The notes below the pieces were generated by a model. It did no database searches and was not told the DNA's origin. It saw nothing but the letters and a program-made list of their open reading frames with translations. DNA of 62,873 nt, the filler included, from Octopus bimaculoides (lineage: Eukaryota), in assembly GCF_001194135.2 (NCBI RefSeq). It is 6 parts of 6 records of this genome, joined end to end, with 100 filler letters (N's around TTAATTAATTAA, not from the genome) between each part and the next. Parts side by side here need not be neighbours in the genome. Positions count along the whole stretch, not along the records: positions 1 to 23,915 come from NC_069005.1; 5 more parts are not named here. One strand, given 5' to 3'. The translations under genes and the position numbers were made by a program. Shown here one piece after another: positions 7,943 to 28,645 of this stretch (positions are counted from its first letter, which is position 1; each line of letters starts with the position of its first letter).

Positions 7943-7987
7943 ATATACATTAAGTGCCGACTACATAAACAAACTATTCTGAAACAA

Positions 7988-9315: not shown

Positions 9316-9387
9316 ATGCCGCTTTGTTGTAAGTCTTGCTGTCGTAAGGACGTCGCGGGCAAAGATGGTAAAAAAGGGAAGAAGACT
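9316..9387 (+). CDS. Candidate first coding exon, MPLCCKSCCRKDVAGKDGKKGKKT, possibly of the PhnD-like gene
   Basis: GCC-ATG context; 24 open codons ending at a phase-0 donor ACT|GTAAGA; the acceptor at 20501 is also phase 0. Confidence 0.5.
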
Positions 9388-9515
9388 GTAAGATTTCAAC
9401 TATTTATTTCTCCATTTTTCTACACTCCATCATAAATACAATCAGTCTCTCATCACTTGAGAAATGTGTGTGTGTGTGTGTGTGTGTGCGTGCGTATGTT
9501 ATGCATGTGTATAGT

Positions 9516-9889
9516 CAGGGCCGGATTTATGCATGAACCATGACTCGCGGTCCCCAAGTTTGGTTGCCAGGGTATGGGACAGGAGCTTTTAACAGAGGTT
9601 CTAAAGCTCTGAGTTAAAACTTAAGAATTACAATTCCTTTGTTTACTTTTTCTTATTTAATCCATACGTTCTTTTAAAAGTATTGACCCTTTTCATTTTC
9701 TGGCCTTGTTCTATTTAAAAGGCCATTATATTGAACCGAGTTTCTCTGAATCTACCGTGGCCCTTTCAAGTTTCGGGACCTTAGCTTTAATGGGGCCATC
9801 TTTATCTTGGATTTTGAATTAGCAAAATCCGGGGTACCCGCAAAACCTATTAGTCCAGAGTCCTTCCTCTAGGTCTAAACCCAGCCCTG
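9516..9889. mobile_element. hAT-like MITE
   Basis: TIRs CAGGGCCGGATTTA (9516-9529) and TAAACCCAGCCCTG (9876-9889); 8-bp flanks TGTATAGT / TGTATCTC are a degenerate TSD. Confidence 0.55.
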
Positions 9890-10039
9890 TGTATCTCGAT
9901 GAGTCTTTTTATTTGCTAACTCTGCAAGAAGGGCCAACACACTTTGCCTTCGTAATCCCTCCAAGACTGCTAAGATCGATACTGTTAATGTTCCTCTGGC
10001 TTTTCTAAATTAACTGTGGGGTGTTGATTTAGAGGAGGT

Positions 10040-10460
10040 ATTTTAAGAAGGAATTGGACATAGCGATTAATGCAGGAGTAGTCGAGGTTGGAACAAGCAA
10101 GTGTGATGAGAAGAGGAAAGTTGAATCAGAAAAGCTTGAGATGAGACAGCATGAGCGTAACCAGATCAAGTACCTTCATGTGCTGAAGAGCAGAGCCAGT
10201 CGTGTGATGCCGTTCTAGCTATAATAAAGATGTGCTTTCGCCCGGAAAGATCTTCAGTGGCAGTGAGGGTGAGGGTGTACATTAGGCGCGATTGTAAGCG
10301 ATCTGGTTGTATTCTGCTTATGTTTAGGAGTCGAGGATGGGGCGAGAAGATATCGTCTTGAGAGGGGTAATGGCTGTGCTTCTTTGCTTCTGTACGAGAT
10401 AAAACTGGCATATTCCACTCCACCCCCATTGAGAAGGGATGATCTCGATGGTTTGACATG
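10040..10460 (-). mobile_element. Degraded CR1/L2-like LINE RT C-terminal fragment
   Basis: Frameshifted minus-strand stretch CSNLDYSC resembles the RxxLDYCS motif that follows the RT core in CR1/L2 LINEs. Confidence 0.3.
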
Positions 10461-10526
10461 TGGTAACGTAGCTTCAGAATGGATGATGTATGTTCAGTGA
10501 ACGTGAACGAAGAAGGGTAGGGTATA

Positions 10527-10758
10527 CGGGGGGGGGTGCTGAAAAGTTCCTGCCTTTAAGTGTATCACGAATGGCCTGGATGCCTAGTTAAGAAGCCCAA
10601 TCTTCCAAGTTCTTTTACAGGGCTTAGAGAAACCGCAACACCGCTGCCATAAGTGTGAATCTGAGAGGGGAATATGTTCAATAAATTCATAATTCACTGA
10701 TCCACCTGTATTTTTTTTTTTTTTACCCAAAAGCCAGGAACTTTTCAGCACCCTCTCG
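10527..10758. mobile_element. Tc1/mariner-type MITE
   Basis: TA followed by TIR CGGGGGGGGGTGCTGAAAAGTTCCTG; right TIR AAGCCAGGAACTTTTCAGCACCCTCTCG. Confidence 0.75.
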
Positions 10759-11166
10759 AGTGTGTATGTTATTGGACAAAAACAAATACTTGTTACAACT
10801 TTGTGTGTAATTTAATATATATATATATATATCTACTCCCACTATATATATTTCTTGCCTCTCGCACAAACATTATCATGTACAGACTCAAACACACTTG
10901 TGTAACATAACCTAATAACTTCCAAAGTACAAGTAACATGGTTTTGTATTATCTTACTCTGGTGCCCTCCTCTGGCTTTCAACAGAAGAAAAAAAACACC
11001 ACTTTTCTCAGTTGTCAACAAACATACACCCCCCCCCCTCTNNNNNNNNNNNNNNNNNNNNNNNNNNNNNNNNNNNACTTATACGATAAATAGGACTGAA
11101 TATTTGTGAAACATACCATACATTTTGCATTTGAGTTCCCCCGAGATGAACATACACACGTACACA

Positions 11167-11203
<37 letters not shown>

Positions 11204-11735
11204 GTATACAACACAAGCACGCATACGCCTTTAAAAGAAGTATGTTTATATATGTAATACTGTGTGTTTGTGAAGGGTGTGTCACAATCAACCAATCAGA
11301 TATCAATATCTTATATAGCTATATATATATACACATATTCAGTTAACCCCTATGGATTGAAAGACAAAAATCGACCCAGCAGGATTCGAACTCGGATTGC
11401 TTGTGTGTATGTTAATTAGTCTTATATATGCATGTATTTGTGTATGCGTGTATATTTTATATCTTTGTAGAGTTGTATGTGTACGTATATATATATTTAT
11501 ATATATATATATACACATACACATTGCCTGTTTGTATGTATGTATATGTGTGTGAATCCATATACACATTTACGCTTATCTACGTACACACAAACTTTAA
11601 CCTCTACCAACCGACGTTACATGTTCAACACTTAATTGGGGTGACGTATTCTATCGCATGTCAAACTAGTTTTGTGTCAACGCACTAAACAGATTATATA
11701 ATATATATAGCAGGACATATACATACCATTTCCTT

Positions 11736-11779
<44 letters not shown>

Positions 11780-14284
11780 GGTAGGACAAATGCCTTATTT
11801 TGATTAATCTTTTAATACGAAGTAGTCAAGTAATTTTCGATCAACCAACGTTACGTGTGTGTGTTTGTGTGTGTCTGTGAGTGAGGCCTTGTAACACACA
11901 CACAAACTTGTCGAATCTGTACGGAAACAACGATCTCCTTTTCAAAACATAAGGAACTACATAAAAACGACAGTAAAATTTACCAAACCAAAACTACATA
12001 CTGGGATTCACGGAAGTCTACAAAACTTTTTAAGTATGTTTTATTGTATTTTAAAAATATACTATAAAGTTGCAATTAAATCGGTCCACAGTTTTCCTCA
12101 GATTGTAAAGTATTTACACTATATGCGTGGAATACCCGATTGTCTAGAAAAAAATTCTATGATTTTTTTTTTTATTAAATATACCATAAAATGGTAATTA
12201 ACTCAGTTTAATTAACATTAGCAATCACTTAGGTTAAATGATGATTTATTTGTTAATTGTGAGAAAAATCTGGCAGGTCGTTTTTATGTGGTCACTTGCA
12301 TTTTGAACTAGAGGTCGTTGTTTACGACTACATATATGTGTGTATTTGTTAACAGTTCATTATTCAAAGTTTAGTTTGAATGAGCTACGGCTCAGCGAAC
12401 GTGGTAGTCAATGTCAATAAATTTATATAAATTTTTAGATATTTGCTTTTACACGTGTTATGAGATGTTTTAATTATACATGAAAACTTTGGAACAAGAT
12501 ACTCGTTTTCACCTTTAACTTATATAATTTTGACGATGCTCGAAATAGCCAACGAGGGAGCCTCTACGGAGTTTAATTGCTCGTCTGCCGTATCATCTTA
12601 GAAATAAAGAATGGAATGATACATTGTAACCTTAATCTCAGTGTTTCCCAATCTATTTTCCCCCAGGCTCCGCTATAACTTTCCAGAAAAATGTATACCT
12701 CACCGATGGTTGGGAAAAATAAATTATTTCTAATATTTCATAATTATACATTTTCCTCTAGAATAGCGCTGTATTGTGCAGCAAACAATCTTCACGCAGT
12801 CTGTTTGGTTGGCGGGATTGGCTGGGCTGAGTAAAGGTGAAGTATGTTTGCCGTAAAAAGATTTTCACAATTCCAGGCCACGGCGGTGGGGCGTGTGCCC
12901 CACTTTGGAAACCACACACAGGTCTACATGATGCTGTATCTGAATAGGGGACGGATGATCACGGGCTACTTGAACGCCCTTTTACCACAGGTCTACTTTA
13001 TCAAGGGAGACTTGGGACAGACAGGAGCAAAGCTCTCTAGACAACACTGAATGATAGAGTAGCTATGTGTGATAGCTACGTTTCTATACATATTGGCTTG
13101 AAAAAGAGCCCCCCCCCCCGCCAGGTTTGGGAAGATTTGTAAATTCACATCTGCGAGATCTCATCTTAATTGTCCCCATCTGGTGGAGAGCCATGTGGGC
13201 TTCATCTCATAACCTTTTGTGTATTACTTATAATACACAGGACTTTTCCTTGGCGTCCAATCGTCATATATAACACATTTCTAAGGCGGTGTCCCAGCAT
13301 AGCTACAGCCTAATTAATGACTGGAATAAGTGAATGATAAAACAATTTCTAAAATTAGAATTGATAATATCCTATCATTTTTTGTTTGTTTTTTGGAATA
13401 TTGCTATTAATTATAAAAAATGATTAAATGTTATCGAAACCGATTTTCCTTCTATCTTTCAAATTAGCAAGCATTAACCTTCAGCTAGTCCTATGTAATA
13501 ACATGTGGTGATACACAGAACACATTTCCCTGCTATCCATGCATTTATATATGAAACACATTCCGAATTTTTCCTTAGCCACCCACCATAGTCACTCAGG
13601 ACTTACGAAAGGAAAGCTTTATACGATTAATGAACGATAAAACAAGAGCTTAATTAAAAATCTGAAAAGAAGCATGGATATTTAAAGCCAACTTAATGAA
13701 AATGCTTTTGGGCAGGCAACGGGGTTAATGTAGATCTTCGCTGCTTAACATTTTGACATTTGTCCTGGCTAAGTCCTTCTCTCACCTCTCCCGAAATATC
13801 TTCTAGTCATTTCTTCTCCATTTCAATGACACGATGTAGTTTATAGTTGCGCAATGTAGTTTTAATTTCTAGGTGTTCCTAAAATAACAGATGTTCACGG
13901 TTCGGAATGTCTTTAATCACATGTTTGCACAACCAAAATTCGTTTAGACCTAAACTACAATTCCTTTTTCCTTTTATATTTATATATATTTATATTTTTT
14001 TCCTTCCAACGTGTCCCAGTTCAAGTGACTTCCCTAACAAATACCAACCTAACATTAACACTTCTTTCTTTGTCTCTTCCTTCCTTTTCCACTTTCTTCT
14101 TTACTCTCTTTCTCTCTCCTTTGTGTCTCTTTCTCTTCCCTTTATCTCTCTCCCTTCTTTTCCGTTCTTTCTTTCTCTCTCACCCCCACACACTATATAT
14201 ATCTCTCTCTCTGTGCTATTTAACCCTAGGTCATCTGATTCACACCAAACCTGACCACTTCGTCTCTTTCAGACATCGTGTACC

Positions 14285-14316
<32 letters not shown>

Positions 14317-14806
14317 NNNNNNNNNNGTGTGTGTGTGTGTGTGTGTGTGTTCTTAATAAACACCAACATAAAACGAAACAAGGCTACTATGTTTAGCAAA
14401 TCGATCTGGTTCCCCGGCTCCACTTGGTGGTGATCTTATTCGCTGTGACTCACCCGACATTCTATCTTTTTGTTGGATGACTGGTGATTTTACTCCAAAC
14501 AAGCTTTCTTGTCAGTTTGCCATAAGGAAGAGCGATCGAACCTGTTGAATACATATACACTCCAGGTTGTATTGATATTACTAACAATAATGACGATAGT
14601 AAACCTAAGATTAGCCACCCAAACTTATTATTATTATTATTATTGCTGTTGTTGTTATTGTAATTATTTGTCTTCTTTTCATATGCTTTATAATGTCTGT
14701 TTACGAGCTAAGTAAGTATTTCAATCTACGGAAATAGCAGTCAAATCTCTCTCTCTCAACAAATCATACACCATTGCTTTAATGTAGGTCTAAAAAAAAA
14801 AGCCTT

Positions 14807-14899
14807 ATGTCTGGAAAAAAAAAAAAGGAGGCGGGGGAATGTCTGCAATATTCGTTCGATCGTAGGTCTGTTTCGTTCGTCAGAACTTTACCCCTGAAG
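14807..14899 (+). other. Possible alternative 5' exon (coding or UTR) upstream of the PhnD-like gene
   Basis: Ends at donor AAG|GTAAAC; the ATG at 14807 is open for 31 codons to a phase-0 junction. Confidence 0.2.
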
Positions 14900-15761
14900 G
14901 TAAACAATTATTTTGCGTGTGTGCGCACGCACGTGTTTAACAGACGTGAGAATGAAGATTTGCTTGTTTCCAGTAACCATGCTGTATAGACATTCATTAG
15001 AATTTATATACATAAAAAGCACGTTTAAAAACATCATGGCATCACATAAATCCAACATTAGCACACTCCGTTGGTTATATTCTATTTTGCAAACATACCG
15101 AAAAGTTCCCTGGCAATTGAAAACGCCCCAAACAACCAACGAAGCCATTAAGTTATGTTGGCAATTCAAAGAGATTGTATTGTTGCCAATGATTGATTGT
15201 TTTTGTCAAGATCTAAACCTGATTTCTGATCAAATTTAGTTACAGGCTTGAGAGAATGTGTTTAGTGTTTATCATTATCGATCGATCAAAAACTTGGCGG
15301 GCCGCACTTCCCCCGGGTTCTTAAACACCAGACTGGTGCTGTTGTTGGCAATTTGCCCGTGATGAAGCTAGTTCCCTTAAGAAAAACTGATCTATTGTTG
15401 ATATTTTAACCTCGGGTCTGTTCTGATCGAGACAGATCCATGGCAAAAAAGCATTCCACATACCACTGACCAGCTCTTTTTTATTTCTTGTTTTATTATT
15501 TTTAATGTAAAGTATGTCTACGGTCTAACATTACTCAATGTGACTTTCTGTTTTAAGAATGTGTGTGTGTGTGTGTGTTTCGCGAGTATGTGGCTGATAT
15601 TTCTAGCAAACCTAGCGGCCACATACACGTTAGATCGGTGATCGGTTTATGATGGTCATAATAATCTTTAGCTTCGATTGAGCCGGCCTGTAATCAATAG
15701 CATTCCAGCTGTGACCATCCGTTATTTTTGCTTTTATTGTTTTTATTTTATATTTATTTAG

Positions 15762-16990
15762 TTGTGGCTTAGTGGTAAGAAGCTTGCTTCCCAACCNNNN
15801 NNNNNNNNNNNNNNNNNNNNNNNNNNNNNNNNNNNNNNNNNNNNNNNNNNNNNNNNNNNNNNNNNNNNNNNNNNNNNNNNNNNNNNNNNNNNNNNNNNNN
15901 NNNNNNNNNNNNNNNNNNNNNNNNNNNNNNNNNNNNNNNNNNNNNNNNNNNNNNNNNNNNNNNNNNNNNNNNNNNNNNNNNNNNNNNNNNNNNNNNNNNN
16001 NNNNNNNNNNNNNNNNNNNNNNNNNNNNNNNNNNNNNNNNNNNNNNNNNNNNNNNNNNNNNNNNNNNNNNNNNNNNNNNNNNNNNNNNNNNNNNNNNNNN
16101 NNNNNNNNNNNNNNNNNNNNNNNNNNNNNNNNNNNNNNNNNNNNNNNNNNNNNNNNNNNNNNNNNNNNNNNNNNNNNNNNNNNNNNNNNNNNNNNNNNNN
16201 NNNNNNNNNNNNNNNNNNNNNNNNNNNNNNNNNNNNNNNNNNNNNNNNNNNNNNNNNNNNNNNNNNNNNNNNNNNNNNNNNNNNNNNNNNNNNNNNNNNN
16301 NNNNNNNNNNNNNNNNNNNNNNNNNNNNNNNNNNNNNNNNNNNNNNNNNNNNNNNNNNNNNNNNNNNNNNNNNNNNNNNNNNNNNNNNNNNNNNNNNNNN
16401 NNNNNNNNNNNNNNNNNNNNNNNNNNNNNNNNNNNNNNNNNNNNNNNNNNNNNNNNNNNNNNNNNNNNNNNNNNNNNNNNNNNNNNNNNNNNNNNNNNNN
16501 NNNNNNNNNNNNNNNNNNNNNNNNNNNNNNNNNNNNNNNNNNNNNNNNNNNNNNNNNNNNNNNNNNNNNNNNNNNNNNNNNNNNNNNNNNNNNNNNNNNN
16601 NNNNNNNNNNNNNNNNNNNNNNNNNNNNNNNNNNNNNNNNNNNNNNNNNNNNNNNNNNNNNNNNNNNNNNNNNNNNNNNNNNNNNNTGATCAGAAGCGGT
16701 CCTTCCAAGACCGTCTCATCTTTTCCGTGTGTGTGTAAAACAACTTGCTGTTCCCTATCTCCGTCTTTTGTTTTTTGTAAATTTGATCTACGTGTGTGTG
16801 TGTGTGTGTGAGAGCAGGGGTGTCTATGTGGTTTAGAAGCTTGTGGTTCCGAGTTCAATCGCACTGCATGGAATCTTAGGTGTCTCCTAGTATAGCCCCG
16901 AGTTGACCAAAGGCTTTGGAGTGGATTTGATTGGAAACTGAAAGAAGTCGTTCATGTGTGTGTGCGTGTTGCTGTCTCCTCACTTTGACA
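15762..16990 (+). mobile_element. tRNA-derived SINE family B pieces on either side of an assembly gap
   Basis: Head GTGGCTTAGTGGTAAGAAGCTTGCTTCCCAACC before the gap; a degenerate copy at 16811-16990 matches 22771-23143. Confidence 0.7.
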
Positions 16991-17232
16991 TTGCGTGATA
17001 GTTGTAAACGAGTGTCACCACTATGCAAGCGGTCTCCTTTGTTTCCATGGAAATATGTCTGTCTGGTCATGCATATATATTACCTTGCTTGAAAACGGGT
17101 GAGTGTTGGCAACAGGAAAGGCATCCAGCCATGGAACATTCACCACAAATTCTCTGACCCAGGTGAACATGGAGACGTGGCTGTAAAAACAATATGTGTG
17201 TGTGTGTGTGTGTGAGTTTAAATGTAGTTTGT

Positions 17233-17410
17233 ATATGTATGTATACATTATCATCTAACGTCCTTTTTTCCATGCTGGCATGGGTTGGACACTTTGACAA
17301 AAACAGATGAACCAGAAGACTCTGCCATGTGTTATGTCTGCTTTGACATGGTTTCTACAGTTGGATGCTCTTCCTAACACTGACCACTTAAGTGTGCTGG
17401 GTGCTTTTTT
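17233..17410 (-). mobile_element. RTE-tail-related repeat (family D)
   Basis: CATCATCTAACGTCC...CATGCTGGCATGGGTTGGAC is the reverse of the (GAT)n-tailed family at 61490-61972. Confidence 0.7.
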
Positions 17411-17432
17411 CACATCACACACACACATATAT

Positions 17433-19625
17433 ATCATCTTTTAATGCCTGTCTTCTATGCTGGCATGGGTTGGACAATTCAACAAGATTCTACACATAAG
17501 TTGAAAGACTCTGTTGTGCTTTAATATCTACTTTGGTATAGTTTCTACAGCCGGATGCCCTTCCTTACACCAACCACTTTGCAGAGTATACTGGGTGCCT
17601 TTTTTGGGATACCAACACTAGTGAAGTTGCTATGTGGCTCATGAAACTAAGATCTCCGCAACCGAGCGGGAAACAGATTTATGCTAGGTTGTTTGGTTAT
17701 GAAAGAACAGGAAAGAACATTTCTTACTGTTGAGAGACATATGTTTCTTTGTATAATAGGAATAGGTTGGAGTAATCAGAGCGGAAGCCAGAAACAGAAA
17801 TAAAAACNNNNNNNNNNGGATACCAACACTAGTGAAGTTGCTATGTGGCTCATGAAACTAAGATCTCCGCAACCGAGCGGGAAACAGATTTATGCTAGGT
17901 TGTTTGGTTATGAAAGAACAGGAAAGAACATTTCTTACTGTTGAGAGACATATGTTTCTTTGTATAATAGGAATAGGTTGGAGTAATCAGAGCGGAAGCC
18001 AGAAACAGAAATAAAAACGGGGGGGGGGGTGACAAAATGTCAATGTGAGCTGTCAAGGTACATGAAGGGGACGAGACAAGAGAAATGGATGAAAAGGAGT
18101 TGCAGAACTGTGTGGGGTTTTCTAAAAAAATTTGTATAAAAAACAAATTTTTTTTCACCTTTTCTTATCTTTGCTTTTAACTACTTTTAATTTCTTCATT
18201 TACTGTATTTCATTCACTCTCCTCCTTCTCAACCTCTCCTATTAATGGTGTTACCCTGTTGACTATAGTGTGAGAAATGGTTAAAGATGGTTCAGGGATT
18301 GAAGTGAATATAATAAATGATAAACAAGATGACTGTAGAGATTGGGTAAGGGGGAGAGGTAACTAAGAATGGTGAACAAGGGTGGAGAAGTAACTGATGA
18401 TAAATATGTCATAGAAGGGTGATCAATGTAAAATGTGAGTGGAGTGGCGAGGAACAATGTTAAGAATGAGATATGGATGTCAAGGGAAGTGGTTTCAGAT
18501 AGTGGGAGAGATAACTGGCAGCAGAGTAAAAGATGATGAAATGTGTAATTCCAATCTTATTTAATTACAGCCAGCTGTAGAATAATGCAGTAGTTAGGTA
18601 GGCAAGTGATGGAGAGATGAGGAAGTTGTGATGAAGGCATGATGAGTAAATTGGGCAAAAAGCCCAGTTGTGTATTTACATATTTCCAGAATTTCAGTTT
18701 TACTGAGATGGATGGGTCTTTCCAAGCATTACATAACATTAATCAGTATTTGTCTACTCTTTTAAGAGGCACAGTCTTGAGATCAGCCTTCGATACATCA
18801 TCAATACCTTCTTAGGTCTTCCTCTATCACAAGTGCCATTAATATTAAACAATCAGCAACTTCTTTATACGTCTGTTCTCATCCAGATGTACCACATGTC
18901 CATACCAGCGCAGTTTTCTCTCTTACACACTACATATTCTTATCCAACAGAACATCATAGCTTCATTTCTTCTTACTTTTCACTAGTTCTCAGCATTCAA
19001 AACCCACATCTTACTAGCATGTAGCATTGCCATTCACACAAGCATTATACGATTTTTGTCTTCCACACTGAAAGAGAAATGTTTGTTTTCTTTCACCAAC
19101 AAAGGTTGTAGCTCTCTGAACTTCCTCCTGCCTGTTCTTACTCTGGCAACTATACATTCAGAAACTTCACCTCCACTGCTAATTAGGTCATCTAGATAGC
19201 AGAAGCTGTCTATTACAACTTCAAGGCATCCTCTTTGGCATTAGAGAAAATCTATTTCCCCATACACATTTAGTGTTTATTGCTCCTGCACATTTACCAC
19301 GTACAAATTCTATCTTCTCAGTTAAGTTACCTGTGATACCACCATATGGAATTTCTACCTACCCTATTTTTTTTTAACAAACGAGGCAAAGCCATTTTTC
19401 CGATGAAAGCAGAGATATGTTTGTTTTCCTGGTTACTAAAATTTTGGTTTTTACTAAATTAACTTTGAAGTCCTTTGATTTCAGATTTTGCTGCCACATC
19501 TGGAATTTCTTATCTAATTCTCCTACAGATTCAGCTGTAAGAATAAGACCCTAACCATAGAGGAGTTGCCATGGGCAACCAGACTTAAACTCCTTTGTTA
19601 TGGTCTGGAAGACTATGTTGAATAG
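17433..19625 (-). mobile_element. 5'-truncated, degraded RTE-clade LINE (RT C-terminal half, 3' UTR and tail)
   Basis: Minus-strand LFNIVFQTITKEFKSGCPWQLLYG*GLILTAESVGELDKKFQMWQQNLKSKDFKVNLVKTKIL matches the RTE YADD region; downstream LRWYGHVVH...RGRPKK. Confidence 0.85.
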
Positions 19626-19804
19626 GAGGGTAACTAAAAACTGAATCCCGATTAGCTCCTACTTTATCACTATACTTGCTGTTAACCCTTACCTTACTGG
19701 CAGCACCTCTGTACATGGTTTTTGGGATCTCGCACGCCATTTATTTGTCTATTCTTAGCTCCCTCAGGGACCATCAGTTAACAAAGCGAAGAAGCGAAGA
19801 ACAA

Positions 19805-20037
19805 GGCGGCGAGCTGGCAGAAACGTTAGCATGTCAGGCGAAATGCTTAGCGATATTTCATCTGCTGCTACGTTCTAAGTTCAAATTCTGCCGAGGTCGA
19901 CTTTGCCTTTCATCCTTTCGGGGTCGATAAATTAAGTACCAGTTCTGCACTGGGGTCGATGTAATTGACTTAGTCCCTTTGTCTGTCCTTGTTTGTCCCC
20001 TCTATGTTTAGCCCCTTGTGGGCAATAAAGAAATAGG
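19805..20037 (+). mobile_element. tRNA-derived SINE family A, near full length
   Basis: GGCGGCGAGCTGGCAGAAACGTTAGC head, GTTCAAATTC B-box-like motif, tail ...TAAAGAAATAGG. Confidence 0.9.
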
Positions 20038-20501
20038 AAACTGAAAGAATCCTGTCATGTATGTATGGATAGACAGATGGATGCATGCATTTTTGTTCAC
20101 CCTTGTCTAGACATCATGTGATTATTCTAATTGAGCATCATCATCATAATACAAGTAAGGGTGTTCATTTCCATTCTTCTCTGAAAACCATGCCTAGCTT
20201 TGGGGAAAATATTAGCCTTGCTTGGAAACAGGAAGGGCTCCTGGCCATAGGAAAGCTGCCTCAATGAATATCTCTGACCCATGCAAACATACATCCACAA
20301 ACATGTCTGACCATGGGGGCAATATTAGCCTAGCTTGGAAACAGGTGAGGGTTGGTAAGAGGAAGGCTGTCTGACCATAGAAAATTTGCCTCATCAAATT
20401 CTGTCTGACACATGGAAAATTGGACGTTCAAGAATGATGGGGTATGTATTATATCTATTGGTATAATGTTTTTTCTTTATTTTTTATTTTTTCCCCCCCA
20501 G

Positions 20502-20697
20502 TATAAGATGAGTTCTAATATTGAGAGGCTGAACATCGTCACTTATCTTGTTCCTGATGTAGCAGTAGAGACATTTCAGGTTTTTACCGAATACCTTGAA
20601 GATGTGCTTCACATTCGCTGCAACTTGATCTATGAATCCCGATGGCAGTATCCGACGAAGCAAAGGGACCTGTTTGCTGCAGAAGATGTTGATATGG
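20502..20697 (+). CDS. Exon of PhnD/phosphonate-binding (class II substrate-binding fold)-like protein: YKMSSNIERLNIVTYLVPDVAVETFQVFTEYLEDVLHIRCNLIYESRWQYPTKQRDLFAAEDVDM
   Basis: Long polypyrimidine tract + CCCAG| acceptor at 20501; ATG at 20508; donor G|GTTAGT (phase 1). The peptide resembles the N-terminus of bacterial PhnD/SsuA/transferrin-family SBPs (LRxxTYLAP...YLxxxLG...DVGF). Confidence 0.88.
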
Positions 20698-20922
20698 GTT
20701 AGTAATAGTAATAGCTTTTTATCTCTTGATTTGAATGGTTGTCATTGTTGTTCATGTCTTGCCACTGATTAGCTTTCTTCGTTTAACCCTTCAGCGTCCA
20801 GATTTCTCTCTCGAATGTGGTGCTTCTTTATTCACATTCATATGAATTAGTCATGCCTTACATTGTAGCTTTGAGATTTTGATGATGTGATTGTTTATTT
20901 TTAGAATATTATTGCAGAGTAA

Positions 20923-21030
20923 GTGAGGCGCAATGGCCCAGTGGTTAGGGCAGCAGACTCGCAGTCAGAGGATCGCGGTTTCGATTCCCAGACTGGGCGT
21001 TGTGAGTGTTTATTGAGCAAAAAAACACCT
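20923..21030 (+). mobile_element. SINE family C 5' head (truncated) in intron
   Basis: GTGAGGCGCAATGGCCCAGTGGTTAGGGC...GGTTTCGATTCCCAG, with A- and B-box. Confidence 0.85.
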
Positions 21031-21175
21031 GGTTAAGTGACAACCACATTTAGAGCTCTCTATGTTCTGGACCTCTGAGCCTCTCAGACACTTGAAGGCT
21101 AAGACGGCGACCAAACTCTCATAAACCAACCCTTCAGTATTATTTTACTTGTTTTATTGTTTGGTTTCTCACCAG

Positions 21176-21320
21176 GCTTCATTAGTGCTCCGGGATTTCT
21201 CGAAATGCTAGAGAGACCAAACTCGATTGAGCTGTGTCCTGTCGCTCCTGTCTTTTCTCACCCTCTTGGAAGAGGCCGACCTGTGATTTTCTCTGACGTT
21301 GTAGTACGAAGTGAGTCTGG
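21176..21320 (+). CDS. PhnD-like exon: (G)FISAPGFLEMLERPNSIELCPVAPVFSHPLGRGRPVIFSDVVVRSES(G)
   Basis: Acceptor TTTCTCACCAG| (phase 1, restores DVDMG-F); donor GG|GTATGT (phase 2); GRPVIFSDVVVR matches the family GRPxYFSDVIVR pattern. Confidence 0.9.
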
Positions 21321-21794
21321 GTATGTATTCATTCATTCTCTTTACACTCTGCCCTCACCCCTATCTGTCCTTCTCCTTCCATGGCCAGGTCTCTTTTTTA
21401 ACACAGCATCTTCCTATTTGTTGTGTTCCCTTATCATTTTGATTGCAAGGCTCAGCACCTCGGGATCAGCCTTCCCCATTTTTGCCTGTCTTCCTTCCTT
21501 GGTCTTTCTTCTGCCACATTTTCCTTCCATTTGGATTTCCTGGCACTCCCTTTCTCCTATTCCATCGTCCATGCATATTAAATGCTTGAAACCAACACAG
21601 TTGTCTCCCTTGCAGTCTTCTACCTGATTCCTCCTATCTGAGTCATATCGCACGCACGCACGCACGCTCGCTTGCTCCTTTCAGTTTCTATTTACCATAC
21701 CTGCTCACAAAGATTTGTTCAGCCCAAGGTGTCACGTAGTAGGACTGCGACCATATGGTTGGGAAACATGCTTGTTTAGCATAGCCATACCTGC

Positions 21795-22210
21795 ACAGAA
21801 ATTGTTAGCATACTGGGCGTAATGCTTATCTTTATGTCCGGTCTGCACATTCTGAGTTCAAATTCCACCGAGGTCAACTTTGCCTTTCATCCTTTCATCA
21901 TCATCATCATCGGTAAAATAAGTACCAGTTGAGTACTGGCATTGATGTAACCAACTCACTCCCTCCCCCTGAAATTGCTGGCCTTGTGCCAAAACTTGAA
22001 ACCAATATTTTAATTAATTACTAAGTCGGTGATCTGGTAGAATCGTTAGCACTCTGGGCAAAATGCTTAGCACTATTTCCTCTCTCTTTACATTCTGAGT
22101 TCAAATTCCACCGAGGTCAAGTTTGTCATTCATCCTCTCAAGGTCAAGCACTGAGATCGATGTAACTGACTTACCCCTTCCTTGAGATTGGTGGCCTTCT
22201 GCCAAAGCAC
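21795..22210 (+). mobile_element. Two degenerate family A SINE copies in intron
   Basis: GTTAGCA...TTCTGAGTTCAAATTCCACCGAGGTCAA occurs twice (about 21795-22010 and 22025-22210). Confidence 0.8.
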
Positions 22211-22487
22211 AAGGGTCAAGCTGTTTGGGGTCTTTGGGTTGGCAGCAGCAGCAGCGGCAACAAATCTTCATCTGTTGGTTCAAGTAACTCTCCAGCTGTT
22301 GGTCGTGGTCATTGTGACACATTTTCACGTGGTGGTGGTGTTGATGGTGTATGCTATGATGTTGGTCATAGTCGCCATGATGCATTCATTGTTAGAAGCT
22401 TTCTTTGTTTCCCTTTTCTTTCATTTTCTACTTTTTCTTTTTCCATCTTCCAAATGTTCTCAGTTTTATTTGCTTTTCTTCATCTAG

Positions 22488-22624
22488 CAAGGAGTTTGAG
22501 CACCTGAAGGGACACAAGTTTGCTTACTCTCACTCAGATTCGACGACTGGCTACTATATTATGCTCTCTGAGTTGAAGAACCACAACACAGACTCTAGCT
22601 TTTTTGCTGACTCGATCCAATCTG
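22488..22624 (+). CDS. PhnD-like exon: KEFEHLKGHKFAYSHSDSTTGYYIMLSELKNHNTDSSFFADSIQS(G)
   Basis: Acceptor CTTTTCTTCATCTAG| (phase 2); donor TCTG|GTAATT (phase 1); matches the family pattern F.DL.G..FAY....S.SGY.....L.......FF......G and contains an STTG anion-binding motif. Confidence 0.9.
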
Positions 22625-22770
22625 GTAATTTTCTATCTTTGATTTGACATAATGATTCTTTCAAACTTACTCGCCAACCCTTTTCTGCCCTTCTCTCCCT
22701 ATTCTTTCTTTTATGATCACTTTTTATCTTGAGGATAAATTTTTCAATAGCAAATGCACAATTTGTAACA

Positions 22771-23143
22771 GGCGCAGGAGTGGCTGTGTGGTAAGAAGCT
22801 TGCTTACCAACCACATGCTTCCGGGTTCAGTCCCACTGCGTGGCATCTTGGGCAAGTGTCTTCTACTATAGCCTTGGGCCAACCAAAGCTTTGTGAGTAG
22901 ATTTGGTAGACAGAAACTGAAAGAAGCCCGTCGTATATATGTATGTGTCTGTGTTTGTCTCCCCCAACATCGCTTGACAACCGATGCTGGTGTGTTTACG
23001 TCCCCGTAACTTAGCGCTTCGGCTAAAGAGACTGATAGAATAAGTACTAGGCTTACAAAGAGTAAGTCCTGGGGTCGATTAGCTCGACTAAAAGGCGGTG
23101 CTCCAGCATGGCCACAGTCAAATGACTGAAACAAGTAAAAAGA
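22771..23143 (+). mobile_element. tRNA-derived SINE family B, full length
   Basis: GGCGCAGGAGTGGCTGTGTGGTAAG head, GGTTCAGTCCC B-box-like motif, central TA/TG microsatellite, tail ...GACTGAAACAAGTAAAAAG; many copies in the window. Confidence 0.92.
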
Positions 23144-23671
23144 AAGTCCAAACCATGATTATGATAGAGGTAAAAAAAAAAAGTGATAAAATATTAATTG
23201 ACAAGTCCCTTGACCCCTTGGTTGATTATAATGTCGTTATAAATATAAAATAAATGATGTCCTTGTATCATTTGTTTGTGTTTACACAGGTCACTAGTTT
23301 GGGGCAGTAAAATAATTTCTAGTTCCATGACCTCTTTGTATGGGGGAGCTAGGTTCATTGTCTGTTGCTAGAGAGAGAGTGAGAAAGGATGACATTTGTA
23401 CAAACAAACAGAGGGCATAAGCAGTGTGTTGTCCCTCTCATTTCCACTCCCTCGAATGACCAATCCTTTTGCTGGGTTAAGTAAAGTTTGGCAACTAAAG
23501 TAGGTCAACTTAAAACAAAAGATTGACCTTTCTGTGACCAGAGACGCTCTCAGAGGTCAACTCAGCCTCATTAATCTCCAAGTGCAGAAAGGAAAAAAAC
23601 AATATTTATCTGACAATTAACAAAAATGTGGGTTCAGTTTTGAATCCTTAACTGCTGTAGGTGGTCTTTAA

Positions 23672-23706
<35 letters not shown>

Positions 23707-23734
23707 CATACATACATATATATGTGCAAGTACA

Positions 23735-23768
<34 letters not shown>

Positions 23769-23915
23769 CATATATATACATATATATATATATATATGTA
23801 ACTGATGCTGGTGTGTTTATGTCCCTGTAACTTAGCAGTTCGGCAAAAAGAGACCGATAGAATAAGTACTAGGCTTACAAAGAATAAGTCCTGGGGGCGA
23901 TTTGCTCGACTAAAG

Positions 23916-25800: not shown

Positions 25801-28645
25801 GCATGTTTGTGGGAATGAATGTGTGCTTAGTACATATATCTTTATATTGCTGTATCCGCAAATAAATTAAATGCACATATAATAAATGGCAGTCCAATAG
25901 GTAGGAAGGTTTACTAAGGTTGTAAAATCGATTGACTCATGCTTTATAGTTATGTGCGTGAATATATATATATATNNNNNNNNNNNNNNNNNNNNNNNNN
26001 NNNNNNNNNNNNNNNNNNNTTAATTAATTAANNNNNNNNNNNNNNNNNNNNNNNNNNNNNNNNNNNNNNNNNNNNTATATATATGTATGTATGTATATAT
26101 AATACACACTGACACACACGCATACATATGTGACTGTCAGTCAGCAGACAGGCCGCCTTGACGGTTGGACAGATGGGTATACTGACGAACGAAACATCAG
26201 CTCACCAGCAGACATGAGGCTAGATGCATAGACAGAGACGGGGGAGTTACAGAAGAAGTTTTTTTTATGATGACCTATGTCACAAAAAGGGAAAAGGAAA
26301 AGAAAAACAATTCCTGACTGACAAAAAAGCTGAGGAAACAATAGATAACGGTGCATGTCAGTCTTCAAACTTTTTGTTGTTTACAACACGTGGTGTAGTG
26401 TTAATAATCTCAACAAAAACACTACATATATATATATATATCAATCGGTGCCCTTACGCCCGCGTACCACTCTGGATTCATCATTGTTTTATTTTGGAGC
26501 TTTTGTCCCTGTAAACTCGTTATTCGAGCAGATCTCTAGCTAAGTAATATCTGTTGAACATCTTAAAGAGACCAAACGTACAGTAAAAGGATGATCAGAT
26601 ACGAAAATTTAACGAGGAAATCAATCACTTAGTACCCAGATGTGCTTCAGTCAACATCGATCACCTGATCTTCCTTTTTAATTCGAGTTAGATATTGACG
26701 CATCATTCGTACAAGTAAGTTGTATTAAATAGTAATAATAATTCTTATAATTACACGATTTATCACTTTAATTTGTCAGTCTGTATATTCTGAATTCAAA
26801 TGCATTGGATGTAGGTGTATGTTTCCTCTCGCTTTTTTATTAGATTTTTAAAATATTTAAATTAGATTTAAATTCAGAAGGTTATTTGTAATGGTTATTG
26901 CTTGAGTAGGTAAATAACGAAATATAAATATCCGTGAAACTGAATACCACGGGACCTTCACCTTAATTACTTCGTTTATAATGATAACCCTTTGTCCTAC
27001 ATCTGTTCACACGTGCTTGCGAGCTTTCTCTGGTTTCTTACTGGTTTTACGCCATAATTAGCTGAAAGAAAATAATCCGATTTTAATGTTCACACTAACG
27101 TATCCGGCTAACACACTTTCTCTCTATTTCTCTTTTTCTTTCTTTCTCTCTTTCAGCTTACTTCCAAATTAATATATCTATATATTTATATATACATGTA
27201 TATGAATTTTTTGTTTACAAATAAATGATCGAGAATAACCAGATGTTAGTAGAGGTCCTTAGCTCTTTTTTGATAAATGTTTATGGGTTCAAAACTCTGA
27301 GCATATTAGTTATCTCCTCTATGTCATAAGTGTACTTAGTTCCCCAAGCATCTGGACAAGCAACACAATATTGAGATATTTTATTCAGGGGAAGCAACCC
27401 GTGCACTGTCGTCTACAAATTTTACTCTCTTTTTCTCTCTCTCTCTAGTTTCGATTCACTCAGAGATGCAAACAAGGATGTTGGGGTACACGGATACGAC
27501 GATCTCGTGCTATTCAGCTCACGGTGAGAGATGGCTTATAGTGTCTCGTCCCGCCTTCTCAGCCGTAACCTCTTGGACATTAGCGTACCCTCGGTTCCTA
27601 ATAACTATTCACGAAGCTGGATTTAATTTGTCTTGCCCAAATCTCAGATATGTTACATACTCTACGACATAACACCAAATTATTAACACACGTTTCACTG
27701 GGGGGAAAGAAGCTCTTTTAAGTGTTTCCTTTGTTTGATAGTGGAGGGCTAAACTACGAGAAGAAATACATAATTCCTCATTTAAAAAAATAAAAGATAG
27801 AAGGTAAAAAAAAAAAACAGGATAGTTACAGACTTTGATCATGCGTCTGCTTGACCGCAATTGATTTGGGATAGTTGTGAGAAACAGCAGTTCATGTAAT
27901 AATCAATAACAAGTTTTACGTGAACTGTCAGTTACTACGATACACAACTTGAGAGTCAACTTGGCCTTTATACCATCTAAGATAGATAAAATAAGTATCA
28001 AGCATGTACTGCAGTAACCAAACATTTCTTACTCATTCTTGTCACCTTATGTTATAGTAAAATATTGATGGGTTTAACCCATAAAGCGCTGGGATTCGCA
28101 CTTACATAGTACGGCCTGCTGAGCACGTTTTTTTTTTTTTTTGAAAATGAGACTACCATGCACACATGAAAAACAAAAAATAGTTAAAATATCTTCTTAG
28201 TATATAATGGTGGCAAGTTTTACATCATCTGGAAAGTCATTAGTTGAACAATTAGTCCTCTTGCATTCTGGCGGGTATCGGAGCGTTTCAGTGACATGAG
28301 AGCCCCAGCAAACGCCCATAAATTAAATGCATCTATCCGAGTCACGATCGTGGCCTGTCGACCTGATGGCCATGATCGTGGCCCGTCGCGCTTTACATGT
28401 TAGTCAATTATTGACAGGTACTTCGGATTATTACACTAGCCAACCAAATTATTACACTAGCATGAAATAAGTATTACCGAGTACTCTTTCAATGGGTGTC
28501 CAAACACCCACATACTTAAGATTAAGTATAAGAACTATAATTCTTTAAATAAATCAAAAGCCTATCTTTGCTAGGATCTCTCAGATAAATTGATCAGTAC
28601 TATAGTCATTTCCAAACTTGGAAGAACAATTTTTACCTTTCTCTT

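What the first reader, a model, noticed from the sequence alone, without database searches (positions are those of the whole stretch)
20502..22624. Intron-containing animal gene encoding a bacterial-type PhnD/phosphonate substrate-binding protein
Seen in sequence: three exons with canonical GT-AG sites and matching phases (1, 2, 1) join into ...LNIVTYLVPDVAVETFQVFTEYLEDVLHIRCNLIYESRW...DVDMGFISAPGF...VAPVFSHPLGRGRPVIFSDVVVRSESGKEFEHLKGHKFAYSHSDSTTGYYIMLSELK...FFADSIQSG. Established: this motif order (TYLxP, DxGF, YFSDVIV, DLxGxxxAY, STSG, FF...G) characterises the PhnD/PtxB-like Phosphonate-bd family, normally ABC-importer periplasmic components. The STSG loop binds the phosphonate/phosphite oxygens and is STTG here. 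No ABC permease is nearby, and animals lack such importers. Inference: a domesticated, probably horizontally acquired binding protein serving as a stand-alone sensor or carrier. Molluscs are rich in aminoethylphosphonate lipids, so a phosphonate or phosphate ligand is plausible. I recall uncharacterised invertebrate homologues, so the gain may be old, but I know of no described function.
Basis: partly seen in the sequence, partly recalled or inferred. Interest (0 to 1): 0.9.

Follow-up and report, generated by a model that had tools for sequence, protein, structure and literature searches.

The report
Octopus cytosolic PhnD-like binding-protein gene
The three exons are real and belong to an already annotated but unstudied octopus gene for a bacterial-type "phosphonate-binding" fold protein that has no export signal. 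The gene family has been inherited with its introns since before protostomes and deuterostomes split, so it is an old animal family of unknown ligand, not a recent bacterial import.

Summary
Observation confirmed. Window 20502-20697, 21176-21320 and 22488-22624 (+) are GT-AG-bounded exons with end phases 1, 2, 1. Joined, they give an open 159-codon frame that is 100% identical to Octopus bimaculoides LOC106874892 ("uncharacterized protein"). The product passes Pfam Phosphonate-bd (PF12974). An AlphaFold model (pLDDT 90.5) matches AioX, ArrX, PtxB and PhnD.

- The protein belongs to a distinct leaderless clade that fails NCBI's cut-offs for ABC-transporter binding proteins and for PhnD.
- Homologues occur in molluscs, a brachiopod, an annelid, arthropods, a tardigrade and echinoderms. 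Four introns sit at identical positions and phases in the five phyla whose gene structure I resolved; the ostracod has lost one.
- Any bacterial origin therefore predates Bilateria, and the donor is unresolved.
- The residues PhnD uses for the amine of 2-aminoethylphosphonate are not conserved. Octopods changed 4 of 10 pocket positions.

Most likely it is a cytosolic Venus-flytrap binder of a small anionic metabolite. One new lead: about a fifth of the bacterial relatives examined lie next to EgtB or SenA (ergothioneine/selenoneine synthases). The ligand is unknown, and I found no literature on the animal members.

The parts
9316..9387 (+). Alternative first coding exon of isoform X1 (72 nt, ATG at 9316, donor GTAAGA, ends in phase 0). 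It encodes MPLCCKSCCRKDVAGKDGKKGKKT, a Cys-rich plus polybasic N-terminus.
   Evidence: tblastn of XP_014778289.1 (P0003) and exact splice reconstruction to 20502. O. sinensis has the equivalent exon, MPLCKSCCRQDVAGKECKNGKKKT. A role as an S-acylation membrane anchor is my inference from composition only.
9388..20501 (+). Intron of about 11.1 kb between the X1 first exon and the first common exon. It contains four assembly gaps (runs of N) and interspersed repeats.
20502..20697 (+). First common coding exon (196 nt). The ATG at 20508 starts isoform X3 (MSSNIERL...). It encodes strand 1 (NIVTYLVP), helix 1 and the ESRW and DVDMG segments, and ends in phase 1.
   Evidence: The intron after this exon falls at the same alignment column and phase in Lingula, Owenia, Asterias and Darwinula.
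21176..21320 (+). Second common coding exon (145 nt, ends in phase 2). It encodes GFISAPGF...RPVIFSDVVVRSES. It holds the pocket positions equivalent to AioX Cys106 (Ser here) and Tyr131 (Ile here).
22488..22624 (+). Third common coding exon (137 nt, ends in phase 1). It encodes KEFEHLKGHKFAYSHSDSTTGYY...FFADSIQS and holds the S-T-T-G anion loop. It is 9 nt shorter than the 146-nt exon of O. sinensis, Lingula, Owenia and Asterias.
22625..23915 (+). Start of the next intron (5,876 nt in the chromosome). The next exon (GSHFNSLQ...KTLP) lies about 4.6 kb beyond the end of the piece, at the position that would be window 28501-28688.

Best explanation
The finding is the central part of Octopus bimaculoides gene LOC106874892. 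It encodes a two-lobed 'Venus-flytrap' protein of about 300 residues from the Phosphonate-bd (PF12974) superfamily. The protein has no signal peptide and so stays in the cytosol. It belongs to a leaderless clade found in Actinomycetota, Planctomycetota, Acidobacteriota and Chloroflexota and, as a single monophyletic branch, in bilaterian invertebrates, where it has been inherited vertically with its introns. My proposed mechanism is inferred, not shown. A small, probably anionic metabolite binds in the cleft between the lobes. It is held by the Ser155-x-Thr157-Gly loop, His185 and Asp203, which are the positions that hold phosphonate, phosphite, arsenate or phosphate oxygens in PhnD, PtxB, ArrX and AioX. 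Lobe closure then lets the protein act as a stand-alone cytosolic sensor, buffer or carrier, not as a transporter subunit. In Octopus, isoform X1 adds a Cys-rich, polybasic N-terminus that would tether the protein to the inner face of membranes by S-acylation. The octopod lineage replaced four of ten pocket residues (Cys to Ser, Tyr to Ile, Asn to Arg, Tyr to Ser/Asn/Asp), so its ligand preference has probably shifted from that of other animals. The annotated 244-245-residue products are almost certainly truncated models: the last exon, about 60 residues ending in -YY, is missing from the assembly.
For: Gene identity and exons. Fold: Pfam 89.5 bits against a gathering score of 27 for the full O. 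bimaculoides product. AlphaFold2 with 114 homologues gave pLDDT 90.5 and pTM 0.82. Foldseek top hits were AioX, ArrX, PtxB and PhnD, E 6e-15 to 1e-12, TM 0.62-0.72. Profile against PDB sequences: ArrX 3.7e-35, AioX 3e-26, PhnD 7e-18. Leaderless: none of the three isoform N-termini has a hydrophobic segment, and the same holds for 104 of 105 assessable top hits. Old and vertical: homologues named from 20 animal genera. The animal clade is monophyletic in 87 of 100 NJ bootstraps, and its internal grouping roughly follows taxonomy. Intron columns and phases (1, 2, 1, 1) are identical and internal exon sizes (148/146/180 nt) near-identical in Octopus, Lingula, Owenia and Asterias, with one intron lost in Darwinula. 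Pocket conservation: Ser, Ser/Thr, His and Asp are kept in 22-25 of 25 animal sequences and 85-89 of 89 bacterial sequences, mapped through the published AioX/PhnD pocket (PMC5908839). Purifying selection: dN/dS 0.37 between O. bimaculoides and O. sinensis. Expression of the family: a 1,085-bp run assembly (SRR5253657) carries an uninterrupted 283-codon ORF of the closest non-octopod cephalopod-clade homologue, so it is spliced mRNA. The oyster homologue cluster has 145 member sequences from run assemblies. Truncated model: the O. bimaculoides CDS ends 'LPCK*' by reading into an intact GTAAGT donor at the position where O. sinensis splices to a sixth coding exon. Four N-gaps lie in the 10 kb downstream.
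Against: No ligand, localisation or expression data exist for the octopus protein itself. Cytosolic location rests on the absence of a leader and was not checked with a dedicated predictor. S-acylation is inferred from composition only. Leaderless proteins with this fold are often enzymes (Thi5, MqnA, cyclohexadienyl dehydratase; my own knowledge), so 'binder' is not established. Two classic pocket tyrosines are not tyrosine in Octopus (Trp71, Ile126), and dN/dS of 0.37 indicates rather relaxed constraint. Family ligands range from oxyanions to sterols (BstB, PMC10942540) and tetrathionate or thiosulfate sensor domains. Fold membership therefore does not fix the chemistry. I could not inspect model coordinates to check pocket geometry.
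Confidence: 0.6

Rival explanations
1. One reading: a horizontally acquired periplasmic PhnD/PtxB-type protein, domesticated in molluscs as a sensor or carrier for phosphonates such as 2-aminoethylphosphonate, or for phosphate.
For: PF12974 membership. The S-x-S/T-G loop, His and Asp that contact phosph(on)ate oxygens are kept. AioX itself can hold phosphate in this pocket. In Rubrobacteraceae the leaderless relative is the fourth gene of a phnD-phnC-phnE-like operon.
Against: The protein scores below the PhnD equivalog cut-off (45.4 vs 261 bits) and the TIGR01098 cut-off (67.8 vs 112 bits). PhnD's amine ligands Glu177 and Asp205 align to Arg205 and Ser233. PhnD Tyr93 aligns to Ile126. The family is not mollusc-specific: it occurs in insects, a spider, mites, crustaceans, a tardigrade and echinoderms. 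The closest bacterial relatives are already leaderless. Shared introns place the gene before Bilateria.
Confidence: 0.15
2. The protein is an accessory factor or SBP-fold enzyme of histidine-derived thiol/selenol metabolism (ergothioneine, ovothiol, selenoneine) or of selenium/sulfur handling. It would have been inherited from a bacterial module in which the leaderless PhnD-like gene is partnered with EgtB or SenA.
For: An EgtB- or SenA-type gene lies within 2.5 kb in 17 of 85 bacterial loci, and in 14 of 60 loci with full flanks. In Planctomycetota, one Actinomycetota MAG and two unclassified MAGs, the PhnD-like gene is followed directly, on the same strand, by EgtB (TIGR03440, 549-565 bits vs a cut-off of 360). 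In Rubrobacteraceae it sits beside SenA (520 vs 420 bits) and SenB (417 vs 300 bits), and follows a putative oxyanion ABC importer. Kayrouz et al. noted a 'putative selenate transporter' next to many sen clusters. In the bacterial members the pocket Cys, His and Asp are almost invariant: 86, 89 and 89 of 89. In AioX the equivalent Cys bonds arsenite.
Against: About three quarters of bacterial loci show no such neighbour, and other contexts are unrelated. Only 5 of 25 animal sequences keep the Cys, and Octopus has Ser. No OvoA/EgtB-like gene lies next to the animal genes examined. Arthropods, which have this protein, are reported to lack OvoA (my own knowledge, not checked here). The tree does not place animals next to the EgtB-linked bacteria specifically.
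Confidence: 0.2
3. In O. bimaculoides the gene is decaying: the protein is truncated after 'KTLP' and is no longer functional.
For: The annotated products end 60 residues early. Four pocket positions have changed and there is a 9-nt deletion in exon 22488-22624. dN/dS of 0.37 is on the relaxed side.
Against: All five coding exons present are open. The donor after 'KTLP' is an intact GTAAGT, and four N-gaps lie downstream where O. sinensis has its last exon. dN/dS is well below 1. The same pocket changes are shared with O. sinensis and Argonauta, so they are old and have been maintained.
Confidence: 0.04
4. Bacterial contamination or mis-assembly in the octopus genome.
For: The family is overwhelmingly bacterial.
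Against: The exons have GT-AG introns carrying octopus interspersed repeats. The locus lies on a 35-Mb chromosome scaffold. An orthologous locus exists in O. sinensis. Intron positions are shared with four other phyla.
Confidence: 0.01

Closest known systems
ArrX (Chrysiogenes arsenatis) and AioX (Rhizobium/Pseudorhizobium sp. NT-26): periplasmic arsenate/arsenite-sensing binding proteins of the Phosphonate-bd family
   Same: These are the best solved relatives by profile (3.7e-35 and 3e-26) and by fold (E about 1e-14). They share the two-lobe fold and the pocket Ser-x-Ser, His and Asp. Most bacterial members and some animal members of this clade also share the AioX Cys106 position. They act as sensors, not as transporter subunits.
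   Different: ArrX and AioX are exported and signal through a membrane histidine kinase (PMC5908839). The octopus protein has no leader and no such partner. It has Ser for the Cys and Ile for Tyr131. Identity is only about 20%.
PhnD / PtxB / HtxB: ABC-importer binding proteins for phosphonates, phosphite and hypophosphite
   Same: Same Pfam family and fold (TM 0.62-0.72 to 3qk6, 5jvb and 5o2j). The anion loop, His and Asp are at equivalent positions.
   Different: The octopus protein falls below NCBIfam cut-offs. It has no signal peptide or lipobox and no permease or ATPase nearby. PhnD's Glu177 and Asp205 amine site and Tyr93 are not conserved.
Leaderless PhnD-like proteins of Rubrobacteraceae, Acidimicrobiales, Planctomycetota, Thermoanaerobaculia and Chloroflexota (named only 'PhnD/SsuA/transferrin family substrate-binding protein')
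   Same: These are the closest homologues overall, at 35-40% identity, E down to 1e-37, with full-length alignment and no leader.
   Different: The bacterial members keep Cys/Tyr/Gln at pocket positions where animals have mostly Ser/Tyr/Tyr. They lack the animal C-terminal -YY. Some sit next to EgtB/SenA or an ABC importer. None is characterised.
Invertebrate orthologues, e.g. O. sinensis LOC115224559, Crassostrea virginica 'putative ABC transporter phosphonate/phosphite binding protein PhnD2', Lingula LOC106181064, Asterias LOC117289930, Bombyx LOC101746353
   Same: Same gene family, with the same intron positions in the five phyla examined, the same leaderless architecture and, in full-length models, the C-terminal -YY.
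   Different: Only the two Octopus species show the Cys-rich first exon. Octopods differ at four pocket positions from the Lingula/Owenia/Asterias pattern W-C-Y-S-L-S-H-D-N-Y.
BstB (sterol-binding) and the TtrS/ThsS sensor domains (tetrathionate/thiosulfate): other Phosphonate-bd members with non-phosphorus ligands
   Same: Same Pfam family. BstB (7t1m) is a Foldseek hit at 2.7e-9.
   Different: They are much more distant. They are listed only to show that family membership does not determine the ligand.

Membership tests
Pfam PF12974 Phosphonate-bd | Score at or above the curated gathering threshold (27 bits) | tested here: met
   41.3 bits for the window-encoded part. 89.5 bits for the full O. 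bimaculoides product and 100.4 bits for O. sinensis.
Class II periplasmic-binding-protein fold (Venus flytrap) | Two alpha/beta lobes joined by a hinge, superposable on solved members | tested here: met
   AlphaFold2 gave pLDDT 90.5 and pTM 0.82. Foldseek against PDB gave AioX, ArrX, PtxB and PhnD as top hits with probability 1.00 and TM 0.62-0.72.
NCBIfam TIGR01098 (phosphate/phosphite/phosphonate ABC transporter substrate-binding protein subfamily) | Score at or above the curated cut-off of 112.05 bits | tested here: not met
   67.8 bits (P0001) and 77.0 bits (O. sinensis). Other animal and leaderless bacterial members score 74-91 bits. By contrast, the lipoprotein PhnD in the Rubrobacteraceae operon scores 216.8 bits.
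PhnD (NCBIfam TIGR03431 equivalog) | Score at or above the curated cut-off of 261.1 bits | tested here: not met
   45.4 bits (P0001) and 68.5 bits (O. sinensis).
PhnD (E. coli type) | 2-AEP pocket: Tyr47, Tyr93, Ser127, Thr128, Ser129, His157 for the phosphonate; Glu177 and Asp205 for the amine (as listed in PMC5908839) | tested here: not met
   The octopus equivalents are Trp71, Ile126, Ser155, Thr156, Thr157, His185, Arg205 and Ser233. The anion loop and His are kept. One Tyr and both acidic amine ligands are lost. The mapping is through sequence alignment to AioX, not through coordinates.
ABC-importer substrate-binding protein (functional class) | N-terminal signal peptide or lipobox for export | tested here: not met
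   The maximum 11-residue Kyte-Doolittle hydropathy before strand 1 is 0.2-0.55 in all three isoforms and in O. sinensis, against 2.4-3.6 in exported relatives. This is a heuristic, not SignalP.
ABC-importer substrate-binding protein (functional class) | Cognate permease and ATPase genes encoded alongside | tested here: not met
   The window has no other long ORF. The 52-kb chromosomal locus has only one other called gene, with no Pfam hit. In some Rubrobacteraceae relatives this feature is met.
AioX/ArrX/ArxX arsenic-oxyanion sensor subfamily | Pocket Tyr88, Cys106, Tyr131, Ser161, Ser163, His192, Asp210, with periplasmic location and a histidine-kinase partner | tested here: not met
   Octopus has W, S, I, S, T, H, D at these positions, no leader and no two-component genes nearby. 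Many bacterial members of the clade do carry C, Y, S, S, H, D.
Bilaterian leaderless PhnD-like family (defined here) | Four introns at conserved columns with phases 1, 2, 1, 1; no leader; C-terminal -YY | tested here: met
   The introns are met and so is the absence of a leader. The -YY could not be seen in O. bimaculoides because the last exon is missing from the assembly. It is present in O. sinensis and in nearly all full-length animal models.

The most novel reading that the evidence does not exclude
The animal proteins are cytosolic components of histidine-derived thiol/selenol chemistry (ovothiol, ergothioneine or selenoneine handling) or of selenium/sulfur oxyanion handling. They would descend from a bacterial two-gene module in which a leaderless PhnD-like protein works with the non-haem-iron sulfoxide/selenoxide synthases EgtB and SenA. 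That would give a first function both to an orphan bilaterian gene family and to an unnoticed partner in ergothioneine/selenoneine gene clusters.
Probability: 0.12. Interest if true: 0.85.

Novelty: new variant of a known kind. Interest (0 to 1): 0.55.

Why it matters
Stand-alone bacterial-type solute-binding proteins are not part of the usual picture of animal cell biology. Here a whole family of them is leaderless and conserved with its introns across Lophotrochozoa, Ecdysozoa and echinoderms. It carries only names such as "uncharacterized protein" or misleading "ABC transporter" labels in databases, and I found no literature on it. Finding its ligand would add a cytosolic small-molecule sensor or carrier (or enzyme) to invertebrate metabolism. 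It would also correct the transporter annotations and provide a dated example of an ancient bacterial-type gene fixed in animals. The EgtB/SenA neighbourhood in bacteria gives a concrete hypothesis that is cheap to test. For this window specifically, the result also flags a truncated RefSeq model and an unnoticed Cys-rich alternative first exon.

Tried and rejected
- Single-sequence structure prediction failed (pLDDT 31). I repeated it with a 114-sequence alignment.
- The word-indexed homology search with the window fragment found only the protein itself. The exhaustive HMMER search was needed.
- PDB sequence search with the fragment alone gave only marginal hits (E about 0.02). The family profile gave clear ones.
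- Looking up P0001 for genomic context failed because only the longest isoform is indexed. P0003 worked.
- The first alignment offered to the genome scan was too diverse. A tighter one worked.
- I looked for the missing last exon of O. bimaculoides with the O. sinensis C-terminus in the 10 kb downstream and found nothing. Four assembly gaps lie there.
- I looked for a conserved operon partner across all bacterial loci. Apart from EgtB/SenA and the Rubrobacteraceae ABC genes, the other recurrent neighbours are confined to Rubrobacteraceae and related Actinomycetota, so they look like lineage-specific synteny. Judged from their sequences, these are ArgS, Rho, RlmH and a metallo-beta-lactamase-fold protein; a metallophosphoesterase was confirmed by Pfam.
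- ORFs flanking the Planctomycetota gene pairs looked largely spurious (Arg/Pro-rich), so I did not pursue them.
- ARAGORN and Rfam found nothing in the window.
- Literature searches for PF12974 in eukaryotes, the LOC identifiers, 'PhnD2' and egtB-neighbourhood binding proteins found nothing on the animal family.
- Contamination and pseudogene readings were considered and rejected (see rivals).
Full report
**1.

Reading window 20000-23915 and splicing the three stretches gives exons at 20502-20697, 21176-21320 and 22488-22624 on the + strand. Each is preceded by AG and followed by GT. The exons are 196, 145 and 137 nt long, and cumulative end phases are 1, 2, 1.

The window part alone passes Pfam Phosphonate-bd (PF12974) at E=1.6e-10 and 41.3 bits, against a gathering score of 27. 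It covers profile positions 4-133 of 242, the N-terminal half of the domain.

**2. What the gene is**

The peptide is 100% identical to Octopus bimaculoides LOC106874892, annotated as 'uncharacterized protein' with isoforms X1 to X3. The window maps without mismatch to chromosome CM046625.1:28,738,975-28,762,889 and lies wholly inside this 32-kb gene.

Exact splice reconstruction shows how the isoforms begin and where the gene continues:
- Isoform X2 starts 3.6 kb upstream of the window.
- Isoform X3 starts at the ATG at 20508.
- The next coding exon lies about 4.6 kb beyond the end of the piece.

The O. sinensis orthologue (306 aa) has one more exon, which encodes the last 60 residues and ends in -PTYY. 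The O. bimaculoides models instead end 'LPCK*' by reading into an intact GTAAGT donor. Four N-gaps lie in the 10 kb downstream. I therefore read the 244-245-residue products as truncated models, not as a truncated protein.

dN/dS between the two Octopus species over 242 codons is 0.37. That indicates purifying but fairly relaxed selection.

**3. Fold and nearest relatives**

- A single-sequence prediction failed. With 114 homologues AlphaFold2 gave pLDDT 90.5 and pTM 0.82.
- Foldseek against the PDB returned only Phosphonate-bd family structures at the top: AioX, ArrX, PtxB and PhnD, with E from 6e-15 to 1e-12 and TM 0.62-0.72.
- A family profile against PDB sequences ranks ArrX (3.7e-35) and AioX (3e-26) well above PhnD (7e-18) and PtxB (9e-17).
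- NCBIfam cut-offs are not reached. TIGR01098 scores 67.8 against 112 bits, and the PhnD equivalog scores 45.4 against 261 bits. This holds for all animal and leaderless bacterial members tested.

The protein is therefore a member of the superfamily, but not of PhnD or of the curated transporter binding-protein subfamily.

**4. A leaderless clade**

An exhaustive HMMER search found 1,111 representatives at E<=1e-3. Of the 149 best hits other than the query, 105 could be assessed, and 104 of those begin directly at strand 1 with no hydrophobic leader. All three octopus isoforms do the same. Exported relatives show a clear leader.

So the loss of export is not an animal 'domestication'. The nearest bacterial relatives are already cytoplasmic. 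They come from Rubrobacteraceae, Acidimicrobiales, Planctomycetota, Thermoanaerobaculia and Chloroflexota.

**5. Age and inheritance**

Named homologues come from many invertebrate groups:
- Cephalopods: Octopus, Argonauta, Acanthosepion.
- Gastropods: Candidula, Bradybaena.
- A chiton (Liolophura) and an oyster (Crassostrea).
- A brachiopod (Lingula) and an annelid (Owenia).
- Insects: Timema, Bombyx.
- Crustaceans: Darwinula, Artemia, Macrobrachium.
- A spider (Araneus) and mites (Oppia, Medioppia).
- A tardigrade (Paramacrobiotus).
- Echinoderms: Asterias, Holothuria.

All are uncharacterised or carry automatic transporter names. No vertebrate, nematode, cnidarian or sponge protein was among the named hits. 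The tools list only the best hits, however, so absence is not shown.

In neighbour-joining trees the 25 animal sequences form one clade in 87 of 100 bootstraps. Cephalopods group in 91 of 100, and the internal order roughly follows taxonomy. When the GTDB loci are added, animals are sister to the whole leaderless high-GC bacterial clade, so no donor lineage can be named.

The decisive evidence is gene structure. Exact gene models give introns at the same four alignment columns with phases 1, 2, 1, 1 in Octopus, Lingula, Owenia and Asterias. Internal exon sizes are 148/146/180 nt in all four, apart from 145 nt for the first of these in both Octopus species and 137 nt for the second in O. bimaculoides. 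Darwinula has lost one intron. The intron-bearing gene therefore existed before protostomes and deuterostomes split.

A bacterial origin remains the economical reading, because the family is overwhelmingly bacterial and the animals form a single branch. It is ancient, though, and the tree alone does not prove the direction of transfer.

**6. The pocket**

I used the published AioX/PhnD pocket (PMC5908839) and checked the numbering against the HMMER alignment. The ten pocket positions compare as follows.

| AioX position | Octopus residue | Leaderless bacteria (of 89) |
|---|---|---|
| Tyr88 | Trp71 | variable |
| Cys106 | Ser92 | Cys 86 |
| Tyr131 | Ile126 | Tyr 82 |
| Ser161 | Ser155 | Ser 88 |
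| Asn162 | Thr156 | Leu 56 |
| Ser163 | Thr157 | Ser 85 |
| His192 | His185 | His 89 |
| Asp210 | Asp203 | Asp 89 |
| Tyr212 | Arg205 | Asn 56 |
| Pro240 | Ser233 | Gln 74 |

Slowly evolving animals (Lingula, Owenia, Asterias) read W-C-Y-S-L-S-H-D-N-Y across these positions. Octopods share four derived changes: Cys to Ser, Tyr to Ile, Asn to Arg, and Tyr to Ser/Asn/Asp.

The oxyanion-holding core (S-x-S/T-G, His, Asp) is thus the best conserved part of the protein. This supports ligand binding, or catalysis, in the cleft. PhnD's amine site (Glu177, Asp205) is not conserved, so there is no specific support for 2-aminoethylphosphonate.

Family members are also known to bind arsenate, arsenite, phosphite and hypophosphite. 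A solved entry is described as GpxB in complex with G1P. BstB binds sterols. Phosphonate-bd domains are also discussed in papers on the tetrathionate and thiosulfate sensor kinases. The fold does not fix the ligand.

**7. Bacterial gene neighbourhoods**

I clustered ORFs from 80 GTDB loci and added five loci fetched earlier. Two recurrent contexts emerged:
- (a) In Rubrobacteraceae the gene order is lipoprotein PhnD, ABC ATPase, permease, then the leaderless PhnD-like gene. The lipoprotein scores 217 bits on TIGR01098 and also 174 bits on the 'putative selenate SBP' model, below that model's cut-off. These operons often sit next to SenA (520 bits against a cut-off of 420) and SenB (417 against 300).
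- (b) In Planctomycetota, one Actinomycetota MAG and two unclassified MAGs, the leaderless gene is followed directly on the same strand by EgtB (549-565 bits against a cut-off of 360).

An EgtB- or SenA-type gene lies within 2.5 kb in 17 of 85 loci, and in 14 of the 60 loci with full flanks. The selenoneine discovery paper mentions a putative selenate transporter near many sen clusters, but not this leaderless gene.

This is a real but partial association. Most loci lack it, and other contexts are unrelated. I treat it as a hypothesis about the chemistry, not as a result for the octopus protein.

**8. Mechanism and novelty**

Most likely (about 0.6) the product is a cytosolic Venus-flytrap binder of a small, probably anionic metabolite, acting as a stand-alone sensor, buffer or carrier. 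In isoform X1 it may be tethered to membranes through the Cys-rich, polybasic N-terminus. That tethering is inferred from composition and from conservation of the exon in O. sinensis.

Shown here: gene structure, fold, lack of a leader, ancient vertical inheritance, pocket conservation and purifying selection. Inferred: ligand class, binder versus enzyme, S-acylation, and the direction of transfer.

The gene is already in RefSeq and UniProt with its Pfam domain, so its existence is not new. New here are:
- its placement in a leaderless clade distinct from PhnD;
- the bilaterian-wide conserved intron structure;
- the octopod pocket shift;
- the extra first exon;
- the truncated gene model;
- the EgtB/SenA link.

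Literature searches found nothing on the animal family.

Noticed in passing
window 9316-9387 (+): Alternative first coding exon of isoform X1. It encodes MPLCCKSCCRKDVAGKDGKKGKKT: five Cys in the first nine residues, followed by a Lys-rich stretch. It is conserved in O. sinensis. It looks like an S-acylation and polybasic membrane anchor. No equivalent was seen in Argonauta, the decapodiform-like transcript or other phyla.
   Followed up: partly
L008 42143-42330 and downstream (beyond the window; would be window 28501-28688): The RefSeq O. bimaculoides models end 'LPCK*' by reading through an intact GTAAGT donor. O. sinensis splices here to a sixth coding exon of about 60 residues ending in -PTYY. 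That exon was not found within 10 kb downstream in O. bimaculoides, where four N-gaps lie. The model is probably truncated.
   Followed up: partly
window 22488-22624: This exon is 137 nt in O. bimaculoides but 146 nt in O. sinensis, Lingula, Owenia and Asterias. There is an in-frame 9-nt deletion in the loop after strand RPVIFSDVVVR (SG-KEFEHL against GGDYNEFERL).
   Followed up: partly
window 17607-17807 and 17818-18018: An exact 201-bp direct duplicate lies on either side of a 10-N gap. Tandem Repeats Finder also reports it as a 211-bp period with 2 copies. It is most likely a gap-closing or assembly artefact and not a real tandem repeat.
   Followed up: no
window 2488-2609, 19800-19921, 21796-21897, 22023-22140; also 22979-23092 and 23800-23914; 1403-1536 and 1641-1770: Interspersed short repeats of 100-135 bp at 78-90% identity. 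Two copies lie inside the 1.2-kb intron between the second and third common exons. Some stretches look tRNA-like by eye, but ARAGORN and Rfam report nothing. They are presumably octopus SINE-type elements.
   Followed up: partly
window 8229-8564, 11042-11076, 14317-14326, 15797-16686, 17808-17817: Five runs of N (assembly gaps) lie inside the 11-kb first intron. The long 'ORFs' listed across them are artefacts of N translated as X.
   Followed up: yes
animal homologues (P0004, P0005, P0010, P0014, P0018, P0019, P0168, P0176, P0182, P0195 and others): Almost all full-length animal proteins end in -YY (Asterias ends in -NY). No bacterial relative does. This animal-specific C-terminal motif has no function known to me.
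   Followed up: no
L046, L047, L049, L053, L057, L059, L069, L079, L089 (about 6000-8200 in most); L013, L014, L016, L017, L018, L022, L041: In several bacterial phyla the leaderless PhnD-like gene is directly followed by EgtB. In Rubrobacteraceae it ends a lipoprotein-PhnD/ATPase/permease operon lying beside SenA and SenB. I did not find this gene pairing described in the papers I could search.
   Followed up: partly
L002 8001-10415, L004 981-3395, L005 8001-10400: A low-GC bacterial subgroup has a signal-peptide-bearing version. It is followed by a small lipoprotein (74-90 aa) and a conserved protein of 368-415 aa with no Pfam hit. An ankyrin-like repeat protein nearby in L005 hints at a host-associated bacterium.
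   Followed up: partly
L006 5267-5626 (Lingula anatina): A second, partial copy matching residues 1-80 of the Lingula protein at 66% identity lies just upstream of the gene. It is a possible tandem duplicate or pseudo-exon.
   Followed up: no
L010 14284-14702 (Asterias rubens): The gene downstream of the starfish homologue carries RAG1_imp_bd (weak), zf-C3HC4 and DUF1280 hits, so it is a RAG1-like gene.
   Followed up: no
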